Positions 2-47,449 of a stretch of DNA of 64,000 nt are shown piece after piece. Made by a program: the position numbers and the translations under genes. Numbering within the stretch: position 1 is the stretch's first letter; each line of letters starts with the position of its first letter. The stretch spans positions 62,001-126,000 of IMG/VR virus record IMGVR_UViG_3300031952_000001. One strand, given 5' to 3'. Below the pieces are notes generated by a model that was not told the DNA's origin, ran no database searches, and worked only from the letters and a program-made list of their open reading frames with translations.

Positions 2-1462
2 TTCAACCGGCCGGACGGCAGCACGGGTTTCGCTTCGGTACTCTGCCCCCTCGGCACCAACAAGTACCTTCAGGAGTCCTTGGGACGCGGTCCGTTGTTC
101 GAGCAGCCCGTGCGTTGCGCCCACTGCGAGGAGTCGCAGCGTCAGTGGGATCTCTTCAACGCCCGGTGGGAGGCTCTCGGGATCGACAAGAAGGCTCTCT
201 CGTCGGACGGCTACCGGGACATGTGCACGCGGGATCCTGTCTTGGCGGTGACGAAGAGGGCTGCGAAAGACATCGGAGCTTGGGACAAGTATTTCTTGGC
301 GATTTTCGACCACGACAAGTTCGTGGGGGCGCGTCCCTTGGGTGAGGGCGACGATCCGGCCACGCTGCACCAGGCGTGGTTCGCTCCGAAGTCGGTGCAC
401 TCGAAGCTGCTCCGGCTGTTCGATGGCGGGGCTCAGTCTGGTGGGGCTCCGCAAGGACTTCGGTTCTTCGAGAACACTCAGGGCGGATTCCCGATCATCT
501 CCATCGTGAAGGACACGAGCAAGTGCAAGAAGAACAACCTGCGGGACACGGAGTACGATGCCGTGTTCAACAATCGGTTCTTCCAGTACCCGCCCGAGTG
601 GCTCGCGTACATCCAGAACTACGCCGCGTTGGTCGATCCGACGGAGACCCTGGTTCACCTTGTCACCTACGAGGAAGGGCTCCACTACGTCAGCCAGACG
701 AAGTCCTCGGGGAACGACTACCAGCAGGCGCAGCAGCAGATGACCGGCGGGGCAGCCCCTGGTGGGATGCCTCCGGGGATGGTCGGGGCCCCACAGGGAC
801 AGCCCCCGTATGGCGCTCCTCCGGGCAGCCCTCCGGCAGCCGGTTGGGCGGGCGCGACGGGGTACCCTCCGGTCGGGAACGCCGGCCAGATGCCCATGAT
901 GCCTCCTCCGGGAATGCCCGCTGGTCTGCCCCCCGGTGCGAACCCTCTGGGGGCTCCTCCGGGACAGCCTCCGATGGGACAGCCTCAGTACGGCCAGGCC
1001 CAGCCCCCGGCGCAGCAGATGCCCTACCAGGCCCCTCCGGGCCAGGCTCCTGGGCCGGCTCCGTACCCGGGCATGGCTCCGGTTCAGCAGGCTCCGGCTC
1101 CGCAGTATCCGGCGCAGCAGCAGTACAACCCAGCTCCTGGGCAGATGCCCCAGGGAATGCCTCCAGGAGCGCCCCCAGCGGCTCAGCAGCCTCCGCAGCA
1201 GTACGGGCAGCCCCAAGGTCAGATGCCCCCGGGGACGCCCCCCATGGTCGGTGGAGCCCCTCCGCAGGGGATGCCTCCGATGGCTCCGCCGCCCCAGCAG
1301 TCGTACGGTGGGGCTCCGGTGCCGAATCAGCCGCCGGCCGTTCCCCCTCCGGGCACGGTTCCGCCGATTGGGGTGGTGCCCGGCTTCGCTCCGCCGCCGC
1401 CCGACAGGGCTCCGACGCCACCCGCTGAGGGTGCTGGTGGTCCGCCGATGCGGCAATGGTAG
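2..1462 (+). CDS. 5'-truncated protein, possibly gp32-like ssDNA-binding protein, with a long Pro/Gly/Gln/Met-rich C-terminal tail
   Basis: Frame is open from the window start. A globular N-terminal part with Cys/His residues is followed by about 250 aa of low complexity. It lies directly upstream of recA. The SSB call rests mainly on context. Confidence 0.4.
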
Positions 1463-3795
1463 GAAGGGGGCCTCTCGTGGTGAAGGACAAAGAGAAGAAG
1501 GCCGCGGAATCTGTGGTCGAGCCGGCAGTGGACATTCTCCGCAAGATCCAGGCGGAGAAGGAAAGCCAGGTGTACGGGATCCAGATGCTGGAGGGCACGA
1601 AGATCGAAAACGTGCCACGGTCTTCTTCCGGCATCTTGAGCGTCGACATCGCTCTGGGGGGTGGGTATCCCTTGGGTCGTGTCGTTGAGATCTACGGATC
1701 TGAGGCCTCCGGGAAAACGACCCTCACCCTTCATGCCATCGCAGAGGTGAATCGCAAGGGTGGGACCGCGGCGATCATCGATCTGGAGAACGCCTTGGTC
1801 CCTGCGTACGGGAAGGTGCTGGGTGTCGACTGGTCGAAGACCTTGATCTCGCAACCCGATAACGCAGAGGTCGCGCTGAACCTGGTCGAGCACCTTTGCG
1901 GCCACATGAAGTCGGGCGACATGATCGTCGTGGATTCGGTGGCTGCGCTCACCCCCGAGGCTGAGATGAGCGGGGAGATGGGGGACTCGCACATGGGTCT
2001 CCAGGCGCGGCTCATGAGCCAGGCGCTGCGGAAGCTGACGCACATCGTTTCCACCTCTGGAATCATCCTGATCTTCATCAACCAGATTCGTTGTCTCCCC
2101 TTGGATTCGTTGATATTGCGCAATGGCGCTCTTTCCCGTTTGAAGGATCTTCGGATGGGTGACGTAGTACCCTACTGTTGTGAGTCCAGCACTACCGTTC
2201 AAGGTCTTCACATCGCCGGAGTTGTTCCCGGCAAGAAGTTACAGCCAAAGAATTGCCCACCTTTTAGTCTCAGTAACTTGCATTGGCAGCCTGTCGTGGA
2301 TTGTAGGGGGCAGGTTATTAACAAGCAAGGTTCCGACATTGCAGTGGGTGATTGGCTTATTCAGCCCCTCTTGAAGAAGAGCCAGCAACTTTCTGATGCT
2401 GCCGGCTATATCGACCTTTCCGATGTGATTCAGTCGGTGGGAGAGGCGTTGCCGTCTAACGCTGCCAAAGTGCAGCTTCCAAGAATTCTTGATGAAGACC
2501 TGGCATTCTTCCTTGGGTGTTGTTACTCAGACGGAAACTTATATCAGGATGTCGATAACAGCGACTATCGTATGCAATTTACAGAGAACAGTGTTGATCG
2601 TCACACTCTGATAAAAGACTCCTGTGAGAAAGTATTTCCAGGGCTGTCTTTTGTCTCTGAGAACAAGGTGGCTCTTTACGGGAAGGCTATTTTTCTATTT
2701 CTTAAAGGTCTTGGTTGCAAAGAGCACGGGTCTGAGAAAATCATTCCAGAAAGGATACTACAATCTCGGCGCAGCGTCGTTAGGGAGTTCTTGCGTGGTT
2801 CTTTGTTTGATTCTCATGGGTTCGATAGCCATGGTTTTATTTTTACGCATGAGAATCTTGAAGCGGCTTATGAGTTTTCTAAGGTTCTGTATTACTTTGG
2901 AGTTTCTGCGGATGTTCGTGATGGGTATCTCTACATCACCGGAGCCGATGCTTTGACTTTTTCTGAAATTATAGGGTTTTCTGAACAATATAAACTAAAG
3001 AAGTCTAAGTTGTTTATTGAGACCCCCAATGCTCGCGGTAAGTATGATGTCGTGCCTTTTGAACTTTCAGAGGCCATCTTCAAGTTGATAAAGACCCTGG
3101 GGGTAAAGGGTATCTCTGGTATCCCCTATTACAATTCTTTCAAGATGTGCTTATTCAAGAGGCTTAACACTTCCAGGTTAGGGTTGATCTCGTTTTTGCG
3201 GGAGATTCAAGAGAGTCCGACGCCGTACTCTGAAATCCAGAACTTTTTGGATTTACTTAGTGATAACAGATTCTACCAGATTGAGAGCTTGGAGGATACT
3301 GAGTTCGATGCTCTGGATGTAGAGACTGGTTCAGGTCTTTTTATATCGGATAGATTCTTGACGCATAATAGCAAGATTGGTGTAGTGTTCGGCAACCCAG
3401 AGGTAACTACCGGAGGGAACGCGCTCAAGTTCTACGCCTCTCAGCGCATCGAAGTGCGTGGCGGCACCAAGCTCAAAGGCGTCGGGGAGGGCTCTCCTCC
3501 GGTGGGCCAGATCACACACATCAAGGTGGTGAAGAACAAGGTCTCTATGCCGTTCAGGAACACCGATGTGGATTTGTACTACGGCTGGGGTTTCCTCCCG
3601 GCAGCGGACATCTTCGTGACCGGGAAGCGCTACGGTGTCATCGAGGCATCCGGATCCTGGTACTCGTTCAACGGTGAGCGCCTGGGGAACGGAGAGGTCG
3701 CTGCGAAGACATTCCTCGGTCAGAACAAGGAGATGCAGGAAGCCATCAAGAAAGCGGTCCTGGAGAAGGAAAATGCACCCGCAACCGCAGGTTGA
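1456..3795 (+). CDS. recA: RecA recombinase interrupted by an intein
   Basis: Walker [10 protein letters not shown], Walker [63 protein letters not shown]. Confidence 0.97.
2092..3369 (+). mobile_element. Intein with LAGLIDADG homing endonuclease (426 aa) in RecA
   Basis: Starts CLPLDS and ends FLTHN with a +1 Ser. LAGLIDADG-like blocks [10 protein letters not shown] and [14 protein letters not shown] is visibly more AT-rich than the exteins. Confidence 0.93.
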
Positions 3796-39344: not shown

Positions 39345-39713
39345 GGGCCGGAAAGGTTTCGACAGCGGATGTGACGGTGTTCACTGCGTGTACCGCTTGT
39401 AAGTCAGCGGTTTAAAACGACTTTCAACAGACAAATGCCGATGCAGATGTCATCCCCTTCCCGAAGATGGCCGTTCCGTCGCTCCAGCGAGAGGCGGCTT
39501 AGGGAACGTCGGACGTGCGAGGTGCTCGTAACTCGCACGGCCGGCGCAATTCGAGACGAGCAACCCACGGTTTGACAGGTCGCACCGAGAAGCAGCCTGG
39601 ACCCTGGGAGTGCAGTCGTGCGGCACTCTCTGAGACCTTCAGCGCGACCACACACGTAACGAAGTGAACGCTCGACTCTACTGGACGGGGTTTCGATACC
39701 CCCCGGTCCACCA
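39345..39713 (+). ncRNA. ssrA: tmRNA (transfer-messenger RNA)
   Basis: 5' GGGCCGGAAAGGTTTCGAC; 3' GACGGGGTTTCGATACCCC-CCGGTCC-ACCA; acceptor stem with G3.U wobble; tag ORF 39437-39502 reads ADADVIPFPKMAVPSLQREAA*. Confidence 0.92.
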
Positions 39714-40192: not shown

Positions 40193-40264
40193 TGCGGGGT
40201 GGTCAAGTGGCAAGACACCAGGTTCATACCCTGGAGACCGTGGGTTCGAATCCCATCCCCGCTA
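40193..40264 (+). tRNA. tRNA-Met (CAT), 1:72 mismatch
   Basis: Anticodon arm CCAGG-TTCATAC-CCTGG; T arm GTGGG-TTCGAAT-CCCAT; CCA not encoded. Confidence 0.9.
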
Positions 40265-40267
40265 CTA

Positions 40268-40433: not shown

Positions 40434-41045
40434 ATGGTGCATTCTCTACGAGAACAGGCCGTCACCCTTCGAGAGAAGGGTCTTTCTTATTCCGAGATAA
40501 GAGATCGTCTAGGCATCGCAAGAAGTACCCTTAGCTACATGCTGAAAGATATTGTTCTTACGGAAAAACAGAAGAAACGATTAGAAAAGAAGAAGAAAGA
40601 CGGACAGAAAGTTTTGCGGGCTTGGTCCGAGACTCAACCTCCAGAGGTCCTAGCAGCTGTTAGCTCCCGTGGAGGGAAAGTGTGCCAGGAGCGTCATTCG
40701 GAGGCTCTTCGTAAGCACTTGTCCTTGGGTTGGAAGGCTGCCATGCTGACTTATCGAAAGGATGAGCTGCCTATTAAAATTTCTTTAGAAAAAATCTATA
40801 ATAGAGTTTTTTCCAAAGAACTGATAGGTAGGCGGGCCATAGACTTCGCATGTAAAGATCTTCTTATAGAACACACATCAGACCCCACCCACGGAGTGTT
40901 TGATCTCGTTAGGAGGTTTGAAGACGTTGTTTCTGATCCTCGCAAGAAGATAGCCTATCTGGATGTTTCCAAAATAGGTCCTTCTACTAGGAAACGGTTG
41001 GAGAACCTCGGCGTCCTGGTTTTAGATTTTCGGGCACTGGCCTAA
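40434..41045 (+). CDS. HTH plus PD-(D/E)xK-like putative homing endonuclease
   Basis: LREKGLSYSEIRDRLGIARSTLS; IDFACKDLLIE; AT-rich; stop codon lies inside tRNA-Pro. Confidence 0.5.
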   Translation: MVHSLREQAVTLREKGLSYSEIRDRLGIARSTLSYMLKDIVLTEKQKKRLEKKKKDGQKVLRAWSETQPPEVLAAVSSRGGKVCQERHSEALRKHLSLGWKAAMLTYRKDELPIKISLEKIYNRVFSKELIGRRAIDFACKDLLIEHTSDPTHGVFDLVRRFEDVVSDPRKKIAYLDVSKIGPSTRKRLENLGVLVLDFRALA

Positions 41046-41104
41046 CCTGGTAAGGCACATGCTTTGGGTGCATGGGATTCAGGGTTCAAATCCCTGGTGT
41101 CCGA
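41031..41104 (+). tRNA. tRNA-Pro (TGG)
   Basis: Acceptor CGGGCAC/GTGTCCG; anticodon arm CATGC-TTTGGGT-GCATG; T arm CAGGG-TTCAAAT-CCCTG. Confidence 0.93.
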
Positions 41105-41136
41105 CCCAAATGATCTCAAACCGCTCATTTTCCCTC

Positions 41137-41164
41137 TTGACAACCTCCCTCTAGTGGATAGACT
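41137..41164 (+). promoter_or_regulatory. early-type promoter
   Basis: TTGACA-N16-TAGACT. Confidence 0.65.
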
Positions 41165-41185: not shown

Positions 41186-41416
41186 ATGAAGAACTTCGTC
41201 GTGGTGGTGTGGGCCTTTGGGAGCGGAGCGAAGGTGAAGTTCCACTTCATCTCCGAAGAGCACCCGGTCAAGGCCATCATCAAGGGCGTCGAGACGCCTG
41301 ACGTGTGGGACGACATGCTCGCGGAGTACCCCTGCACCGATGAGGGGCTGGAGCAGCTGATCTCGTACTACAGCGACGGCGATGTCATGGTGGCTGCGTC
41401 CGAGCTGCCGCACTGA
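41186..41416 (+). CDS. hypothetical protein
   Basis: SD AGGAGG. Confidence 0.7.
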   Translation: MKNFVVVVWAFGSGAKVKFHFISEEHPVKAIIKGVETPDVWDDMLAEYPCTDEGLEQLISYYSDGDVMVAASELPH

Positions 41417-41422
41417 GGGCTC

Positions 41423-41896
41423 ATGAGCTACGAAGGGTACATAGTCTACTACTGCGAGAACGGCCACAAGGTCGACATCAGGGACTGCTACGAAGGGGGC
41501 GACGAGGATCTTGTCTGTGAGGTCTGTGGATCGAAGGAGATGGTTAGGGACCACGTCGATCAGACGAACGGCTGCTGCTGCTCGCAGATTCCCGAGAAGT
41601 TCCGTCCGTGTCCTTGCCACGAGAAGGACCTGAAGCAGCTCGGGTGGGACTCGTTCGAGTGCAACTACTGCAAAGGGGGTGGTATTGCAGAGCGCATCAT
41701 TCACTACTACCCTGAGGACTGCGAGTGCAAGGGTGGGGATCCTGCGTGTCGCAAGTGCCACGGCACGGGGCAGAAGCACGAGCCCTCTACTTGGGATAAC
41801 ACTACGCACTGTACGCCTTGTAGGGGCACAGGGAAGCTCTGGGAAGAGCGTTACGACATCACCCCTCTGAGGAGAGGGAAGAAGGACACGAGGTAG
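41423..41896 (+). CDS. protein with DnaJ-type CxxCxGxG zinc-finger repeats
   Basis: CNYCKGGG, CRKCHGTG, CTPCRGTG. Confidence 0.65.
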   Translation: MSYEGYIVYYCENGHKVDIRDCYEGGDEDLVCEVCGSKEMVRDHVDQTNGCCCSQIPEKFRPCPCHEKDLKQLGWDSFECNYCKGGGIAERIIHYYPEDCECKGGDPACRKCHGTGQKHEPSTWDNTTHCTPCRGTGKLWEERYDITPLRRGKKDTR

Positions 41897-41899
41897 ACC

Positions 41900-42370
41900 A
41901 TGGAGAAGAATCAGCGTCAGTGCGACATCCTGAACACCCAGACGGGCAAGTGGGAGCCGGCGGAGTTCGAGGCCATCAAGAGGGGGTCGGTCTTCCGGCT
42001 GTTCGATCCCCCCGGTCCCGGGCGCGTCGAGTTCGGCGTTCCGAACCTCGCGCTCGCGGACGCCACGAAGACCTCCGAGGGGGTCGGCACCGTGAACTGC
42101 GAGCAGCTCAACTGGACGGGGGATGACTCCCCCACGCCTGTCGACTTCGCCACGGTCATCCGTGAGCTGAAGGCGTTCCCGGGGAAGAAGTTCCGCAGGG
42201 CCGGCTGGAACGGCAAGGGTATGTGGATCGCCCTCCAGAAGCCGGACGTGAACTCGAAGATGACCCTGCCGTACATCTTCATGAAGACCGCCCAAGGCGA
42301 TCTCGTTCCGTGGCTCGCCAGCCAGACGGACATGCTCGGAGAGGACTACGAAGAGGTCATCGAGCCCTAG
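41900..42370 (+). CDS. DUF2829 / Tad2-like anti-defence sponge domain fused to an unknown N-terminal domain
   Basis: DFATVI..GKKFRRAGWNGKGMWI..PYIFMKTAQGDLVPWLASQTDMLGEDY. Confidence 0.75.
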   Translation: MEKNQRQCDILNTQTGKWEPAEFEAIKRGSVFRLFDPPGPGRVEFGVPNLALADATKTSEGVGTVNCEQLNWTGDDSPTPVDFATVIRELKAFPGKKFRRAGWNGKGMWIALQKPDVNSKMTLPYIFMKTAQGDLVPWLASQTDMLGEDYEEVIEP

Positions 42371-42423
42371 AGATCTTGTGATAGGATCTCCCTCACCATT
42401 CTCTGCCCAAAGGGAGGCATCCA

Positions 42424-43146
42424 ATGCGTCTCATACACGTCAGCGATCTGCACATCAAGGCCCTCCCGAGGGAGAACAAGGCGGTCCGCGAAAAGCTGCA
42501 CGGGGCTCTAAAGCTCGTCGGCTCGACCGATAAGCTCGTCATCACGGGCGACATCACCGACGATGGCTTGGAGAGCCAGTACGCACAAGCCTTGGAGATG
42601 CTCCTGCCGTTCAAGGGGCGCATCGTCATGTGCCCGGGGAACCACGACTACGGTCTCCTGGGCTCCTTCTTCGATGTCAAGTCCGCGAGGCGCTGGTACC
42701 GGCTCTGCGAGGATCTGGAGGTCCACGACCTCACCGAGCTGAAGGTCGACGGGTTCGTGGTCGGGCAGATCCTGGCTCTGGACACTTGTCTGGGTCACGG
42801 AAGCATCATCGATTTCTCCCAGGGCCGGGTTGGGTTCTGGCAGCGGCGTGAGCTGAAGAAGTTCCTCGCGCGGACGTACAAGAGCCGGATGGTCAGCATC
42901 GTCATCATGCACCACACTCCCTTCTACGCGGAGTGGTTCTGCCGTCTCCAGGACGCCAAGAAGTTCTTCGATACGGTGCTCGGCCAGGCGGACTACGTCC
43001 TGATGGGTCACGAGCACAAGGAGAAGCGATCCCACTACCCGATGAAGGAGCCCGAGGAGAGAGCCATCACGCAGTTCTACTGTGCAGGTGCCTTGTTCCA
43101 GGACAAGACCAGCCCCACCATCATCCATCTGCACGACGCTCGATGA
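42424..43146 (+). CDS. calcineurin-like metallophosphoesterase (CpdA/Icc-like)
   Basis: SDLH, TGDITD, PGNHD, MHH, GHEH. Confidence 0.85.
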   Translation: MRLIHVSDLHIKALPRENKAVREKLHGALKLVGSTDKLVITGDITDDGLESQYAQALEMLLPFKGRIVMCPGNHDYGLLGSFFDVKSARRWYRLCEDLEVHDLTELKVDGFVVGQILALDTCLGHGSIIDFSQGRVGFWQRRELKKFLARTYKSRMVSIVIMHHTPFYAEWFCRLQDAKKFFDTVLGQADYVLMGHEHKEKRSHYPMKEPEERAITQFYCAGALFQDKTSPTIIHLHDAR

Positions 43147-43153
43147 TTGCCTC

Positions 43154-43181
43154 TTGACTTTCCCCCAGGCATACCTATAGT
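43154..43181 (+). promoter_or_regulatory. early-type promoter
   Basis: TTGACT-N16-TATAGT. Confidence 0.7.
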
Positions 43182-45416: not shown

Positions 45417-45697
45417 AGCCGTACACCTGGAAAAAGATCGCAGAGGCGTCGAAGGCGGAGAAGAAGCTCATCGTCGAAACGTACGGGTTGCTCGGGGCGG
45501 TCGCCATCGAGCTATCTCATGCGATGACTGGCGCTTTGCTGGTGGACAGCATGACGGCTTGCGCGGTTCACAAGCATCTTCGCCTCTGCGGACTCTGTGT
45601 ATTCGAAACTCAGAGTTGCGACTATGAAGGCGCGAGGAAGAACAACTGGATCAAGTGGTACGCCGAGCTGCACAAGGCCTCCAGGAAGAAGAAGTGA
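45413..45697 (+). CDS. hypothetical protein
   Basis: ATGA overlap. Confidence 0.6.
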   Translation: MKPYTWKKIAEASKAEKKLIVETYGLLGAVAIELSHAMTGALLVDSMTACAVHKHLRLCGLCVFETQSCDYEGARKNNWIKWYAELHKASRKKK

Positions 45698-46494
45698 GCA
45701 CCGACCGGCGCAAAGCCCTGATCGAGAAGATCCGCCTCCTCTTCAACAGAGCGGAGCGCGCGGTCATCGATGCAGACGACCCAGCTTCCGTAGACCATGA
45801 AGCTCAGCTCGCGCTGGAGACGGCGCGTCGGCTGATGCTCCAACACGGCATCGAGGAGTCGGAGCTGGAGGGTACCACCGTCCGTCGAGGAACCCCTGCC
45901 GAAGGCAGCGCTTTGACGGTTACATTGTCAATGTCCAAGCCGGCGAAGTGGGTGCTGTCCCTGGCGGTCGTCATCGCGGACTACTTCTCATGCAAGGCGA
46001 TCTACATCCCAGCCACGAAGAAGCTGAAGGGTGAGATCATCTTCTGCGGTGTCAACATAGGCATCGAGGCCTCCGCGTATGCCTTCGACTCCGTCCTGAA
46101 CCAGATCCGGGTGCTCTCCAAGAAGTACAAAGTGGACAATCGGAGTTGGGAATACTCTAGGCTCCTGCAACTCCGCTTCCGCACCTGGGAGGAGTACAGG
46201 GCCAAGGCCAAGTCCGAATACTGCTTCGGCATCGTGGTGGGGCTCAACGCTCGGCTGGAGGAACTGCGAAAGCAGGAAGCCGCTACTCCCGAGGACGCGC
46301 CCACCACGGCGTTGGCGATCTCGTACTCGACGGTCGCGGATGAGATCGCGCTGATGGTTGATCCCGATCTGTCGGAGTTACTACCTCCACCTCCGATGTG
46401 GACGGGGAACAAGCACCTCCAGGCCGGGATAGAAGACTCGAAGGATGTCCATATCACCCGGGGGCTCGGGGCTCCTGAGGAGGAGACCAAGTGA
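45694..46494 (+). CDS. DUF2786-like domain protein
   Basis: LIEKIRLL..HEAQLALETARRLMLQHGI. Confidence 0.65.
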   Translation: MSTDRRKALIEKIRLLFNRAERAVIDADDPASVDHEAQLALETARRLMLQHGIEESELEGTTVRRGTPAEGSALTVTLSMSKPAKWVLSLAVVIADYFSCKAIYIPATKKLKGEIIFCGVNIGIEASAYAFDSVLNQIRVLSKKYKVDNRSWEYSRLLQLRFRTWEEYRAKAKSEYCFGIVVGLNARLEELRKQEAATPEDAPTTALAISYSTVADEIALMVDPDLSELLPPPPMWTGNKHLQAGIEDSKDVHITRGLGAPEEETK

Positions 46495-46871
46495 AGTTCC
46501 GAGTCCTCAAGCCGGTGGCCTCCGAGTGGGTCGAGTCCGAGGGATCCGTCGAGGACGCCATCCAAGGCCATCATGCAGACGCTCCGGAGAACTTCGCTCA
46601 CGGTGACGGCAGCACGTACCGGATTTATCTCTCCGAGGAAGAGAGCACTGAGGATGTTCGCGAGATCATGAGCTTGAGGCTCTACGAGACCGAGGACGGG
46701 CAGAAGCTCATCTCGACCATCTACCACACAGGGATCTTCCGACAGGGTGGTTTCAAGGACAAGCCTCTAAGAGACCGTACCATTCAGAAGATCTGTGAGG
46801 AGTTGGGTACGACACGAGAGAAGCTGTTCGCTCGTAACCCTGGAGAAGAAAAATACAGGTGGTCGAAATGA
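46491..46871 (+). CDS. hypothetical protein
   Basis: GTGA overlap. Confidence 0.6.
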   Translation: MKFRVLKPVASEWVESEGSVEDAIQGHHADAPENFAHGDGSTYRIYLSEEESTEDVREIMSLRLYETEDGQKLISTIYHTGIFRQGGFKDKPLRDRTIQKICEELGTTREKLFARNPGEEKYRWSK

Positions 46872-47449
46872 ATGCTCTCCTTCTCATCCTGGCCTTCGCC
46901 CTGTTCCAGCCCACCGACACGGTGGTCTTCGTGGGGGACAGCATCACGGCCGGGTACTACCCTGAGATCGCGGCCAAGGCCTTGCACACGCCGCTGTACC
47001 GGTACGCGGTGCAGGGGGCACGGATCAAGCGGATCCACAAGCTGGTCGACAAGGCGCTCGCGAGGAGGCCCACCTACGTGGTGCTGTACGCCGGTCTCAA
47101 CGACTGCGCGGATGCGAATTCGGATCCCTACATCGTCTTCAACAGGCTTGAACGTCTGGTGCGGAAGATCGAGTTCTCAGACTCGACGCCCGTCGTAGTG
47201 AAGCACCACGGATGGTTCGGGGAGCCGAAGTCGTGGCATGGTTCTGCCTGCTCGTACCTGCTCAACTCGATGATGGAGTCGCGCTGGGAGGGCTACATCC
47301 GCATGGTCGACACCCGGTATCTCGCGGACCAGGAAGACACCCTGCTCAAGGAGTACGACGCCGGGGATGGGCTACACCTCAACTACCGGGGTCACAAGGC
47401 TCTTGCCGAGATGGTGGTCGACGAGCTGAGGAAGAAGGGTGGCAGGTAG
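46868..47449 (+). CDS. SGNH/GDSL hydrolase with signal peptide
   Basis: FVGDSIT, GARI, AGLND, DGLHLN. Confidence 0.85.
   Translation: MNALLLILAFALFQPTDTVVFVGDSITAGYYPEIAAKALHTPLYRYAVQGARIKRIHKLVDKALARRPTYVVLYAGLNDCADANSDPYIVFNRLERLVRKIEFSDSTPVVVKHHGWFGEPKSWHGSACSYLLNSMMESRWEGYIRMVDTRYLADQEDTLLKEYDAGDGLHLNYRGHKALAEMVVDELRKKGGR

What the first reader, a model, noticed from the sequence alone, without database searches (positions are those of the whole stretch)
41900..42370. Tad2/DUF2829 sponge fused to an unknown 80-aa domain
Seen: the C-terminal half (from ~42140) has the DUF2829 pattern and the N-terminal half is unrelated. Known: Tad2 proteins sequester Thoeris gcADPR signals, and some bind cyclic dinucleotides. 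Inference: the extra domain may be a new sponge or anti-defence module, making a dual-specificity protein.
Basis: partly seen in the sequence, partly recalled or inferred. Interest (0 to 1): 0.68.

Follow-up and report, generated by a model that had tools for sequence, protein, structure and literature searches.

The report
Tad2 sponge fused to small phage domain
A jumbo phage from sediment encodes one protein that joins a well-supported Tad2 immune-signal sponge to a small all-beta domain; that domain otherwise occurs as a free ~70-residue protein in other large phages, which makes it a testable but unproven candidate for a second counter-defence module.

Summary
Window 41900-42370 (+) is one intact 156-aa ORF. 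Residues 82-153 match Pfam PF11195 (Tad2-like/DUF2829) at E 6.9e-21. The model superposes on solved Tad2 structures (TM 0.83-0.86), and every gcADPR-contact residue of HgmTad2 is conserved. The loop that forms the cyclic-dinucleotide pocket in HgmTad2 is only ~10 residues here, so that pocket is not expected.

The N-terminal 80 residues are coding (GC3 0.92; only synonymous changes against a sister phage). They are not an orphan. An exhaustive HMMER search and a profile search found about 25 clusters of mostly free-standing, acidic 64-86-aa proteins sharing a KKGD(I/V)FRLFD motif. These come from large lytic phage contigs and have no Pfam family and no significant structural match. The domain models confidently as a small beta-barrel (pLDDT 85).

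Only this phage and one 92%-identical relative fuse it to Tad2. It rests here on a single fusion event, and no binding or oligomer evidence was obtained.

Verdict: a real Tad2 fusion with a new partner domain of untested function.

The parts
41137..41164 (+). sigma-70-like promoter (TTGACA-16-TAGACT) ahead of a four-gene unit
   Evidence: 10 of 12 matches; 2 such sites in 2.5 kb against 0.3 expected from shuffles. A consensus match only.
41186..41416 (+). 76-aa gene of unknown function, first gene of the unit; conserved in sister phage L002
   Evidence: 83.5% nt identity to L002 5152-5399; GC3 0.90
41423..41896 (+). 157-aa Cys-rich protein with three CxxCxGxG (DnaJ-type zinc-finger-like) repeats; absent from the sister phage
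   Evidence: sequence; no family; no match in L002; GC3 0.77, lower than its neighbours
41890..41893 (+). Shine-Dalgarno GAGG, 6 nt before the ATG of the fusion gene
   Evidence: read from the sequence
41900..42370 (+). fusion ORF, 156 aa (P0001): N-domain, linker, Tad2 domain
41909..42109 (+). N-domain (aa 4-70): small all-beta domain of the 'KKGD(I/V)FRLFD' family; invariant W18, F32, R33, F35, A51
   Evidence: family; AF2 pLDDT 84.7, pTM 0.71, five strands; profile E 1.6e-26
42110..42139 (+). linker (aa 71-80, NWTGDDSPTP), rich in Pro, Ser, Thr, Asp and Gly; lies where free-standing N-domain proteins end and before free-standing Tad2 proteins begin
   Evidence: (pLDDT falls to 55-59)
42140..42358 (+). 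Tad2/DUF2829 domain (aa 81-153) with conserved W103-N104-G105 and W138-L139-A140-S141-Q142-T143-D144; short beta2-beta3 loop (aa 114-123)
42275..42370 (+). 3' patch of the gene that is only 76% identical to the sister phage, while 41900-42274 is ~98% identical: a recombination mosaic inside the Tad2 domain
42424..43146 (+). 240-aa calcineurin-like metallophosphoesterase, last gene of the unit; weak resemblance to CpdA/SpdA cyclic-nucleotide phosphodiesterases
   Evidence: PF00149, E 2.2e-17; NF008359 E 6.9e-8 and NF050112 E 5.5e-5, both far below their cut-offs; no PDB sequence match
43154..43181 (+). next sigma-70-like promoter (TTGACT-16-TATAGT), marking the end of the unit

Best explanation
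The gene encodes a genuine two-module protein of a ~212-kb sediment phage.

Module 2 (aa 81-153) is a Tad2-family sponge. By homology it should form a homotetramer with two pockets at protomer interfaces. These pockets would sequester ADP-ribose-derived signals made by TIR enzymes (3'cADPR/gcADPR, possibly His-ADPR or N7-cADPR), so that Thoeris effectors are not switched on. Its beta2-beta3 loop is too short to build the separate cyclic-dinucleotide pocket seen in HgmTad2 and SptTad2.

Module 1 (aa 4-70) is a small acidic beta-barrel. It comes from a rare family that normally exists as a free ~70-aa protein in large lytic phages, and it is joined to module 2 by a 10-residue flexible linker. 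I think it most likely is a second, independently acting counter-defence module, displayed in four copies on the Tad2 tetramer. It could be a ligand-binding, sponge-like unit that uses its conserved basic and aromatic residues (R6, K27, K28, R33, W18, F23, F32, F35). Or it could be an acidic protein-binding inhibitor.

The gene lies in a four-gene unit behind a host-type promoter, together with a phosphodiesterase-like metallophosphoesterase, which fits early expression.

Shown: the ORF, both domains, the family, the fold class, and conservation of the Tad2 contact residues. Inferred: tetramer formation, ligands, any activity of module 1, and early expression. My odds are about 0.85 that the C-domain is a functional Tad2-type sponge, about 0.5 that the N-domain has a counter-defence role of any kind, and about 0.25-0.3 that the N-domain is specifically a nucleotide-signal sponge.
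For: Tad2 half:
- PF11195 at E 6.9e-21.
- The only significant PDB fold matches are Tad2 structures (24 chains; SPO1 Tad2 E 1e-7, TM 0.83-0.86, rmsd 1.6-2.3 A), with pLDDT above 90 for aa 81-156.
- The HgmTad2 residues whose mutation abolishes gcADPR binding (W21/N22; S90/T92/D93), plus G23, W87, L88, M76 and V84, align with W103/N104, S141/T143/D144, G105, W138, L139, M128 and V136. Most of these are invariant in 63 homologues.
- The tested homologue Tad2_71 carries the same LQxPDxxSKMTxPYIF and VPWLASQTDMLAEDW motifs. It inhibits Thoeris types I, II and IV and binds 3'cADPR and N7-cADPR.

N-domain:
- It is coding and under constraint.
- It has about 25 homologous clusters, mostly 64-86 aa and free-standing.
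- It gives a confident all-beta model.
- Its nearest structural neighbours are uncharacterised 64-126-aa phage proteins.

Precedent: Tad2-Acb4 fusions block two systems, and Sequestin was discovered as a Tad2/Acb4 fusion partner.

Context:
- sigma-70-like promoters bracket 41186-43146.
- The gene behaves as a mosaic cassette with unrelated flanks in the sister phage, as accessory and anti-defence genes often do.
Against: - No experiment or prediction here shows that the N-domain binds anything. The homodimer prediction gave no answer.
- The fusion to Tad2 is one event in two 92%-identical phages, against 60-91 fusion instances for Sequestin.
- The family is acidic (median core pI 4.7, mean net charge -3.7), whereas known sponges have positively charged pockets.
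- Free-standing members lie next to DNA methyltransferases, a UvsW-like helicase, RecA, a Cas4-like nuclease or a metallophosphoesterase, never next to a known sponge.
- DUF2829 is fused to many unrelated N-terminal modules: 42 of the 119 closest hits that carry the GWNG motif. That sample excludes proteins under 86 aa. Fusion alone is therefore weak evidence.
- The host is unknown, so it is unknown whether it carries Thoeris.
Confidence: 0.5

Rival explanations
1. The N-domain has nothing to do with immunity. It is a small accessory protein of phage DNA metabolism (replication, recombination or modification), or a protein-binding adaptor. The fusion is then either neutral or merely tethers Tad2 to a cellular or viral partner. 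Only the Tad2 half acts against defence.
For: Free-standing homologues sit between DNA methyltransferases and a UvsW-like helicase (L010, L013, L014). Others follow an intein-containing RecA, a Cas4-like nuclease (L009) or a 237-aa metallophosphoesterase. Some members carry zinc-ribbon-like extensions (P0132, P0138, L031) or strongly acidic C-terminal tails (P0127, P0138), as seen in proteins that dock onto replication machinery. Weak fold resemblances are to generic small barrels such as the EF-P/eIF5A N-domain and phage neck proteins (Z 3-4).
Against: No neighbour is conserved across contexts, so the association is with early or middle regions in general rather than one pathway. The domain is acidic, which is unusual for a nucleic-acid binder. 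Methyltransferase neighbourhoods are themselves anti-restriction regions. The characterised Tad2 fusion partners are sponges.
Confidence: 0.28
2. The N-domain is itself a nucleotide-signal sponge with a specificity different from Tad2, so the protein is a dual-specificity sponge like the Acb4-Tad2 fusion.
For: Published precedent and discovery logic. The domain is small, phage-restricted and mostly free-standing. Conserved Arg/Lys and aromatic residues (R6, K27, K28, R33, W18, F23, F32, F35, Y/F56) are the kind that line nucleotide pockets. c-di-GMP-binding PilZ barrels recur among the weak fold matches, but none is significant.
Against: There is no oligomer support (no answer). There is no significant similarity to any solved sponge or nucleotide-binding domain. 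The PilZ motifs RxxxR and D/NxSxxG are absent from the alignment. Net charge is acidic. The fusion is a single event.
Confidence: 0.27
3. The N-terminal 64-80 codons are not part of the functional product. Translation starts at the in-frame GTG (V65, 42092-42094), which follows a GAGGGGG Shine-Dalgarno-like run (42077-42083), and gives an ordinary 92-aa Tad2. The fusion would be an annotation artefact, or both products are made.
For: The sequence shows a plausible internal ribosome-binding site with an 8-nt spacer. The 92-aa product would have the usual Tad2 size (85-100 aa).
Against: Codons 1-64 have GC3 0.92 and in-frame codon usage as strong as the neighbouring genes. All internal differences from the sister phage are synonymous. 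The region matches a protein family at E 1.6e-26. V65 lies inside the last conserved strand of that domain. The annotated start has its own Shine-Dalgarno and abuts the upstream stop codon. An additional short product is not excluded.
Confidence: 0.05
4. The DUF2829 half acts as an anti-CRISPR (AcrIIA7-like) rather than as a Thoeris-signal sponge.
For: AcrIIA7, a DUF2829 protein, was reported to inhibit Cas9. PDB entries 8kbi and 9kzr carry that name, and both are sequence matches.
Against: Li et al. could not reproduce any Cas9 inhibition by HgmTad2/AcrIIA7 or other Tad2 homologues. Yirmiya et al. argue that the family is anti-Thoeris. All gcADPR-contact residues are conserved here.
Confidence: 0.04

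Closest known systems
Tad2 (Thoeris anti-defence 2; Pfam PF11195/DUF2829), e.g. SPO1 Tad2 (PDB 8SME/8SMF), and Tad2_71 of Hadary et al. 2025
   Same: The C-terminal 75 residues have the same fold: an alpha1 helix followed by an antiparallel sheet. They share the GWNGKG and PWLASQTDML ligand-contact motifs, a full-length Pfam match, and a short-loop architecture with the LQxPDxxSKMTxPYIF motif of Tad2_71.
   Different: The protein carries an 80-residue N-terminal extension. The loop between beta2 and the next core strand is only ~10 residues, against 24 in SPO1 Tad2 and 41 in HgmTad2. As a result the alpha2 element of the SPO1 dimer interface and the HgmTad2 cyclic-dinucleotide pocket are probably missing. 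Tetramer formation and ligand binding were not tested.
Acb4-Tad2 fusion of Pasteurella phage Pm86, and Tad2-Sequestin (PF21825) fusions (bioRxiv 10.1101/2025.07.12.664507)
   Same: The architecture is the same: a Tad2 domain fused in one polypeptide to another short domain that also exists as a free-standing phage protein. The logic is the same too: one protein, possibly two targets.
   Different: The partner here is neither Acb4 (PF13876) nor Sequestin (PF21825, alpha-helical). It is an all-beta, acidic domain with no Pfam family. The fusion is known from one lineage only, and no activity has been shown.
phrog_19340 (PHROG family of unknown function)
   Same: Three of 13 N-domain family members match it (best E 1.4e-5), so it probably covers part of the same family.
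   Different: The window's own N-domain does not reach the threshold. The PHROG family has no annotation, so the match adds no function.
PilZ c-di-GMP-binding beta-barrels (e.g. Alg44 PilZ 4RT0, PA0012 8U0I)
   Same: They are small six-stranded-type beta-barrels, and they are the top but non-significant Foldseek rows. Several also appear in the VIA list at Z ~3.
   Different: TM is 0.36, E is 0.7 and rmsd is 5-7 A, which is within noise. The RxxxR and D/NxSxxG motifs are absent. This is not a member; it is only a lead for which ligands to include in a panel.

Membership tests
Tad2 / DUF2829 (PF11195) | Sequence match to the family model above the curated cut-off | tested here: met
   75 bits against a cut-off of 25, E 6.9e-21, profile positions 2-73 of 73; the whole-genome scan finds this single copy
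Tad2 / DUF2829 (PF11195) | Tad2 fold (N-terminal helix plus antiparallel sheet) superposable on solved Tad2 structures | tested here: met
   AF2 pLDDT above 90 for aa 81-156. Foldseek against PDB gives 24 significant chains, all Tad2 or AcrIIA7 (the HgmTad2 protein), with E 1e-7, TM 0.83-0.86 and rmsd 1.6-2.3 A
Tad2 / DUF2829 (PF11195) | gcADPR-contact residues (HgmTad2 W21, N22, G23, W87, L88, S90, T92, D93) | tested here: met
   These align with W103, N104, G105, W138, L139, S141, T143 and D144 (with residue roles). Most are invariant in 63 homologues
Tad2 / DUF2829 (PF11195) | Homotetramer with pockets at protomer interfaces | not tested
The tetramer is inferred from homology
Tad2 / DUF2829 (PF11195) | Binds the TIR-made signal and relieves Thoeris defence | not testable with these tools
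   Needs biochemistry and plaque assays. The nearest tested relative by motif is Tad2_71
Cyclic-dinucleotide-binding Tad2 subgroup (HgmTad2, SptTad2, SaTad2) | 35-41-residue insertion between beta2 and beta5 that forms the cyclic-dinucleotide pocket (R31, S47, F70, N85 in HgmTad2) | tested here: not met
   Only ~10 residues (aa 114-123) lie between the two strands. The GWNG-to-SQTD distance is 39 residues in 116 of 117 close homologues
Known Tad2 fusion partners: Acb4 (PF13876) and Sequestin (PF21825) | Match of the N-domain to either Pfam model; alpha-helical fold for Sequestin | tested here: not met
   No Pfam hit for aa 1-80 or for family members. Neither family occurs anywhere in the phage genome. 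The model is all-beta
Phage 'sponge' class as defined by shared traits (bioRxiv 10.1101/2025.07.12.664507) | Short, phage-encoded protein | tested here: met
   Free-standing members are mostly 64-86 aa, on phage-like contigs
Phage 'sponge' class as defined by shared traits (bioRxiv 10.1101/2025.07.12.664507) | Confident homo-oligomer | tested here: inconclusive
   Dimer prediction score 0.19 against a mark of 0.42, verdict 'no answer'. Higher oligomers were not tried
Phage 'sponge' class as defined by shared traits (bioRxiv 10.1101/2025.07.12.664507) | Conserved positively charged pocket at an interface | not testable with these tools
   No coordinates or oligomer model were available. The domain is acidic overall but has conserved R6, K27, K28 and R33
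PilZ domain | RxxxR and D/NxSxxG c-di-GMP motifs and a significant fold match | tested here: not met
   The motifs are absent from the 27-sequence alignment. Foldseek E is 0.7 with TM 0.36, and VIA Z is ~3

The most novel reading that the evidence does not exclude
The 'KKGD(I/V)FRLFD' beta-barrel proteins are a previously unrecognised family of phage counter-defence proteins: a new sponge for an immune nucleotide, or a new inhibitor of a defence protein. This fusion is the natural 'Rosetta stone' that reveals it, and it gives the phage a single early protein that disarms two signalling steps or two systems at once.
Probability: 0.27. Interest if true: 0.75.

Novelty: new variant of a known kind. 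Interest (0 to 1): 0.52.

Why it matters
Fusions to Tad2 have already led to a new sponge family, Sequestin. That survey used only Pfam-annotated partners. This case shows that unannotated partner domains exist, and it defines one as a family: an alignment, a motif, a confident fold model and about 25 clusters. That gives a concrete, cheap candidate for defence-inhibition screens. If the N-domain is active, it adds a new counter-defence family and a second natural example of multi-target anti-defence proteins. If it is inactive, it shows that fusion to a sponge is not by itself a reliable predictor. The Tad2 half also adds a short-loop, sediment-phage member close in motif to the pan-Thoeris inhibitor Tad2_71.

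Tried and rejected
1. Homodimer prediction of the N-domain: score 0.19, 'no answer'. It counts neither for nor against.

2. Full-length AF2 with a Tad2-dominated alignment: the N-half came out at pLDDT 43-61 and was unusable. It was redone with the family alignment.

3. PDB sequence and profile searches for the N-domain, Foldseek PDB and exhaustive VIA (best Z 4.0): no meaningful match. The PilZ and EF-P/eIF5A rows are noise-level leads only.

4. Three long proteins from the exhaustive search (P0122, P0128, P0135): rejected as spurious, because the family profile does not match them at all and they are repetitive or cytochrome-like.

5. Test of whether the N-domain is a divergent copy of the module most often fused to DUF2829 ('GYxVxYxDGYESWSP'): hhalign probability 0.06%. 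The two are unrelated.

6. Conserved-neighbour search across 12 loci: nothing is shared except the domain itself.

7. Motif scans of 185k species genomes gave only chance matches. A metagenome scan gave two new members (one with a zinc-ribbon-like extension), one partial and one locus already held, and no further Tad2 fusion.

9. No RNA runs hold the phage, so expression could not be checked.

10. The internal GTG start was considered and judged unlikely to be the sole start.

11. The host was not identified.

No other genetic code was used. Read laying was given 1,961 letters.

Full report
**What is at the coordinates.** Window 41900-42370 (+) is a single ORF of 156 codons (P0001). Its ATG follows a GAGG Shine-Dalgarno by 6 nt and lies 3 nt after the stop codon of the upstream gene. 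The window is bases 62001-126000 of a 211,982-bp IMG/VR virus record that CheckV rates complete. It carries a tmRNA and two tRNAs, has 60% G+C, and is found in several sediment metagenomes.

**The C-terminal half is Tad2.**
- Pfam PF11195 (Tad2-like/DUF2829) matches residues 82-153 end to end (E 6.9e-21, 75 bits, cut-off 25). PHROGs 1048 and 872 match the same half. It is the only copy in the phage genome.
- Sequence search of the PDB finds SptTad2, HgmTad2/AcrIIA7, SPO1 Tad2 and ModTad2.
- The AF2 model has pLDDT above 90 over residues 81-156. Its only significant PDB fold matches are 24 Tad2 chains (SPO1 Tad2 E 1e-7, TM 0.83-0.86, rmsd 1.6-2.3 A).
- Li et al. (bioRxiv 10.1101/2023.11.15.567273) list the gcADPR contacts of HgmTad2 as W21, N22, G23, M76, A78, V84, W87, L88, S90, T92 and D93. 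After allowing for a one-residue offset in the PDB chain, the HMMER alignment pairs them with W103, N104, G105, M128, T130, V136, W138, L139, S141, T143 and D144. Most are invariant across 63 homologues.
- The same paper shows that cyclic dinucleotides bind in a 35-41-residue insertion between beta2 and beta5. Here that segment is ~10 residues (aa 114-123). The GWNG-to-SQTD spacing is 39 residues in 116 of 117 close homologues, so a pocket of that type is not expected.
- In the supplementary table of Hadary et al. (bioRxiv 10.1101/2025.08.24.671296), the tested homologue Tad2_71 carries the same LQxPDxxSKMTxPYIF and VPWLASQTDMLAEDW motifs. It inhibits Thoeris types I, II and IV and binds 3'cADPR and N7-cADPR.
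- Binding and tetramer formation of this particular protein remain inferred.

**The N-terminal half is real, and it is a family.**
- Codons 1-80 have GC3 0.91-0.92. Their in-frame codon log-odds of +0.40 equal those of the neighbouring genes.
- The only full-length relative is P0002, 92% identical, on a 205,564-bp phage contig from another sample (L002). It differs in this half by a start-codon change (ATG to GTG) and four third-position synonymous changes.
- Contigs from other sediment metagenomes carry the same frame: X2 over 41667-42284, X4 across the whole gene.
- A word-based search and tblastn against phage genomes found no other relative of residues 1-80.
- The exhaustive HMMER search of 1.84 billion representatives found 12 convincing relatives of 64-160 aa (E 8e-10 to 9e-4, 36-49% identity). 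It also found three long proteins, which the family profile later rejected.
- A profile search and a metagenome motif scan raised the family to about 25 clusters.
- The alignment (A4) shows the signature R-x-[VC]-E ... W ... F-x-[DE]-[IL]-K-K-G-D-[IV]-F-R-L-F-D ... E-x-G-x-P-x-x-A ... D-A-Y ... T-[IV]-x-C-E. W18, F32, R33, F35 and A51 are invariant.
- No member has a Pfam domain. Three members match phrog_19340, a family of unknown function.
- With this alignment AF2 gives a confident all-beta model (pLDDT 84.7, pTM 0.71, strands 7-12, 17-21, 31-35, 45-51 and 67-69).
- Foldseek against PDB has nothing below E 0.7. An exhaustive structural alignment peaks at Z 4.0. BFVD and the ESM Atlas return only uncharacterised phage proteins of 64-126 aa (TM 0.55-0.70).
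- The family is acidic (median core pI 4.7).
- Free-standing members end just after the C-E motif, where the P/S/T/D/G-rich linker (aa 71-80) begins in P0001. Free-standing Tad2 proteins begin a few residues before F83. The protein therefore looks like an end-to-end join of two complete units.

**How unusual is the architecture?**
- Among the 120 best DUF2829 hits, 42 of the 119 that carry the GWNG motif have an N-terminal extension of 40 residues or more. The length window of that search excluded proteins under 86 aa, so this fraction is inflated.
- The extensions are very diverse. They include a recurrent 'GYxVxYxDGYESWSP' module, DUF3310 and DUF7768. The N-domain here is unrelated to the recurrent module (hhalign probability 0.06%).
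- Only P0001 and P0002 combine the FRLFD domain with DUF2829.
- The literature already describes Tad2 fused to Acb4, a fusion shown to block both Thoeris and CBASS. It also describes Tad2 fused to PF21825, and those fusions led to the discovery of the Sequestin sponges (bioRxiv 10.1101/2025.07.12.664507).
- Neither PF13876 nor PF21825 is present in this protein or anywhere in the phage genome.
- This is therefore a new partner in a known type of architecture.

**Context.**
- Two sigma-70-like promoter matches (41137-41164 and 43154-43181; 2 found against 0.3 expected) bracket four closely spaced genes. These encode a 76-aa protein, a 157-aa Cys-rich protein with CxxCxGxG repeats, the fusion, and a 240-aa metallophosphoesterase (PF00149).
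- The metallophosphoesterase has weak, sub-threshold similarity to the cyclic-nucleotide phosphodiesterases CpdA and SpdA over most of its length.
- Compared with the sister phage, the gene is ~98% identical from its first codon to 42274 and then 76% identical to its end. The sequences immediately upstream and downstream are unrelated. This is the mosaic pattern of a mobile accessory cassette, with a recombination breakpoint inside the Tad2 domain.
- Free-standing N-domain genes occur in phage early or DNA-metabolism regions:
  - after a 237-aa metallophosphoesterase in a T4-like contig;
  - between DNA methyltransferases and a UvsW-like helicase;
  - after an intein-containing RecA;
  - after a Cas4-like nuclease in a 245-kb AT-rich phage;
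  - within runs of small unknown genes.
- No neighbour is shared across these loci, and none is a known sponge.

**Interpretation.**
- The Tad2 half can be filed as a member of the family with high confidence. It most likely sequesters TIR-made ADPR-type signals as a tetramer.
- For the N-domain I commit to a second counter-defence module riding on the Tad2 tetramer, at about 0.5 for any counter-defence role and about 0.27 for a true nucleotide sponge.
- Points in favour are the validated fusion precedent, its small size, its mostly free-standing and phage-restricted distribution, its conserved basic and aromatic residues, and the cassette-like, probably early, genomic setting.
- Points against are the single fusion event, the acidic charge, the DNA-metabolism neighbourhoods, the lack of any oligomer support (one search gave no answer) and the general promiscuity of DUF2829 fusions.
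- The main rival, at about 0.28, is that the domain is a DNA-metabolism accessory or docking module without an immune role.
- An internal GTG start at V65 with a GAGGGGG upstream could yield a plain 92-aa Tad2 as well. It cannot be the whole story, given the coding signatures of codons 1-64.

**Verdict.** This is a new variant of a known kind and a good, inexpensive candidate for defence-inhibition assays, but not yet a discovery.

Noticed in passing
window 39345-39713 (+); tRNAs at 40193-40265 and 41030-41108: The phage carries a full-length tmRNA (Rfam RF00023, 82 bits, model 1-374 of 374; ARAGORN tag peptide ending ...SLQREAA), plus tRNA-Met and tRNA-Pro just upstream of the Tad2 unit.
   Followed up: partly
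window 41423-41896 (+): A 157-aa Cys-rich protein has three CxxCxGxG repeats, the DnaJ zinc-finger motif, but no Pfam, PHROG or NCBIfam hit. Its GC3 (0.77) and codon score are lower than its neighbours', and it is absent from the sister phage L002. It looks like a recent insertion directly upstream of the fusion gene.
   Followed up: partly
window 42424-43146 (+); ENA contig holding P0124: A metallophosphoesterase with weak CpdA/SpdA-like (cyclic-nucleotide phosphodiesterase) similarity directly follows the Tad2 fusion here and in L002. A free-standing N-domain homologue (P0124) directly follows a 237-aa Metallophos gene in an unrelated T4-like contig. This may be a recurring pairing and a possible signal-degrading enzyme; neither was tested.
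   Followed up: partly
window 42275-42370 versus L002 6376-6471: A sharp drop from ~98% to 76% nucleotide identity occurs inside the Tad2 domain. Contigs of other DUF2829 genes in the same metagenomes overlap the conserved core (loose ends at 42206, 42284, 42303 and 42337). This suggests recombination among co-occurring Tad2 alleles.
   Followed up: partly
window 1456-3795 (+): A 779-aa RecA/UvsX-like ORF matches, in two segments, the RecA fragment on the contigs that hold the free-standing N-domain homologue P0130 (41-65% identity). A sister contig of those encodes an 823-aa RecA with an intein and a LAGLIDADG domain, so the window's copy probably carries an intein too.
   Followed up: no
L002 2459-5161 and 11997-12471: At the place where the window has an HTH protein and tRNA-Pro, the sister phage encodes a 900-aa protein with major-vault-protein shoulder and Vault_3 domains. 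Further on it carries an IS605 OrfB/Cas12f-like TnpB.
   Followed up: no
window 45655-46494 and 46859-47449 (+): A DUF2786/DUF7168 protein and a GDSL-like lipase/acylhydrolase lie downstream. Both are conserved in the sister phage.
   Followed up: no
P0132, P0138, P0127; L031 8738-9229: Some N-domain family members carry zinc-ribbon-like CxxC pairs, before or after the domain, or long poly-acidic C-terminal tails. These are the only other architectures seen for the family.
   Followed up: partly
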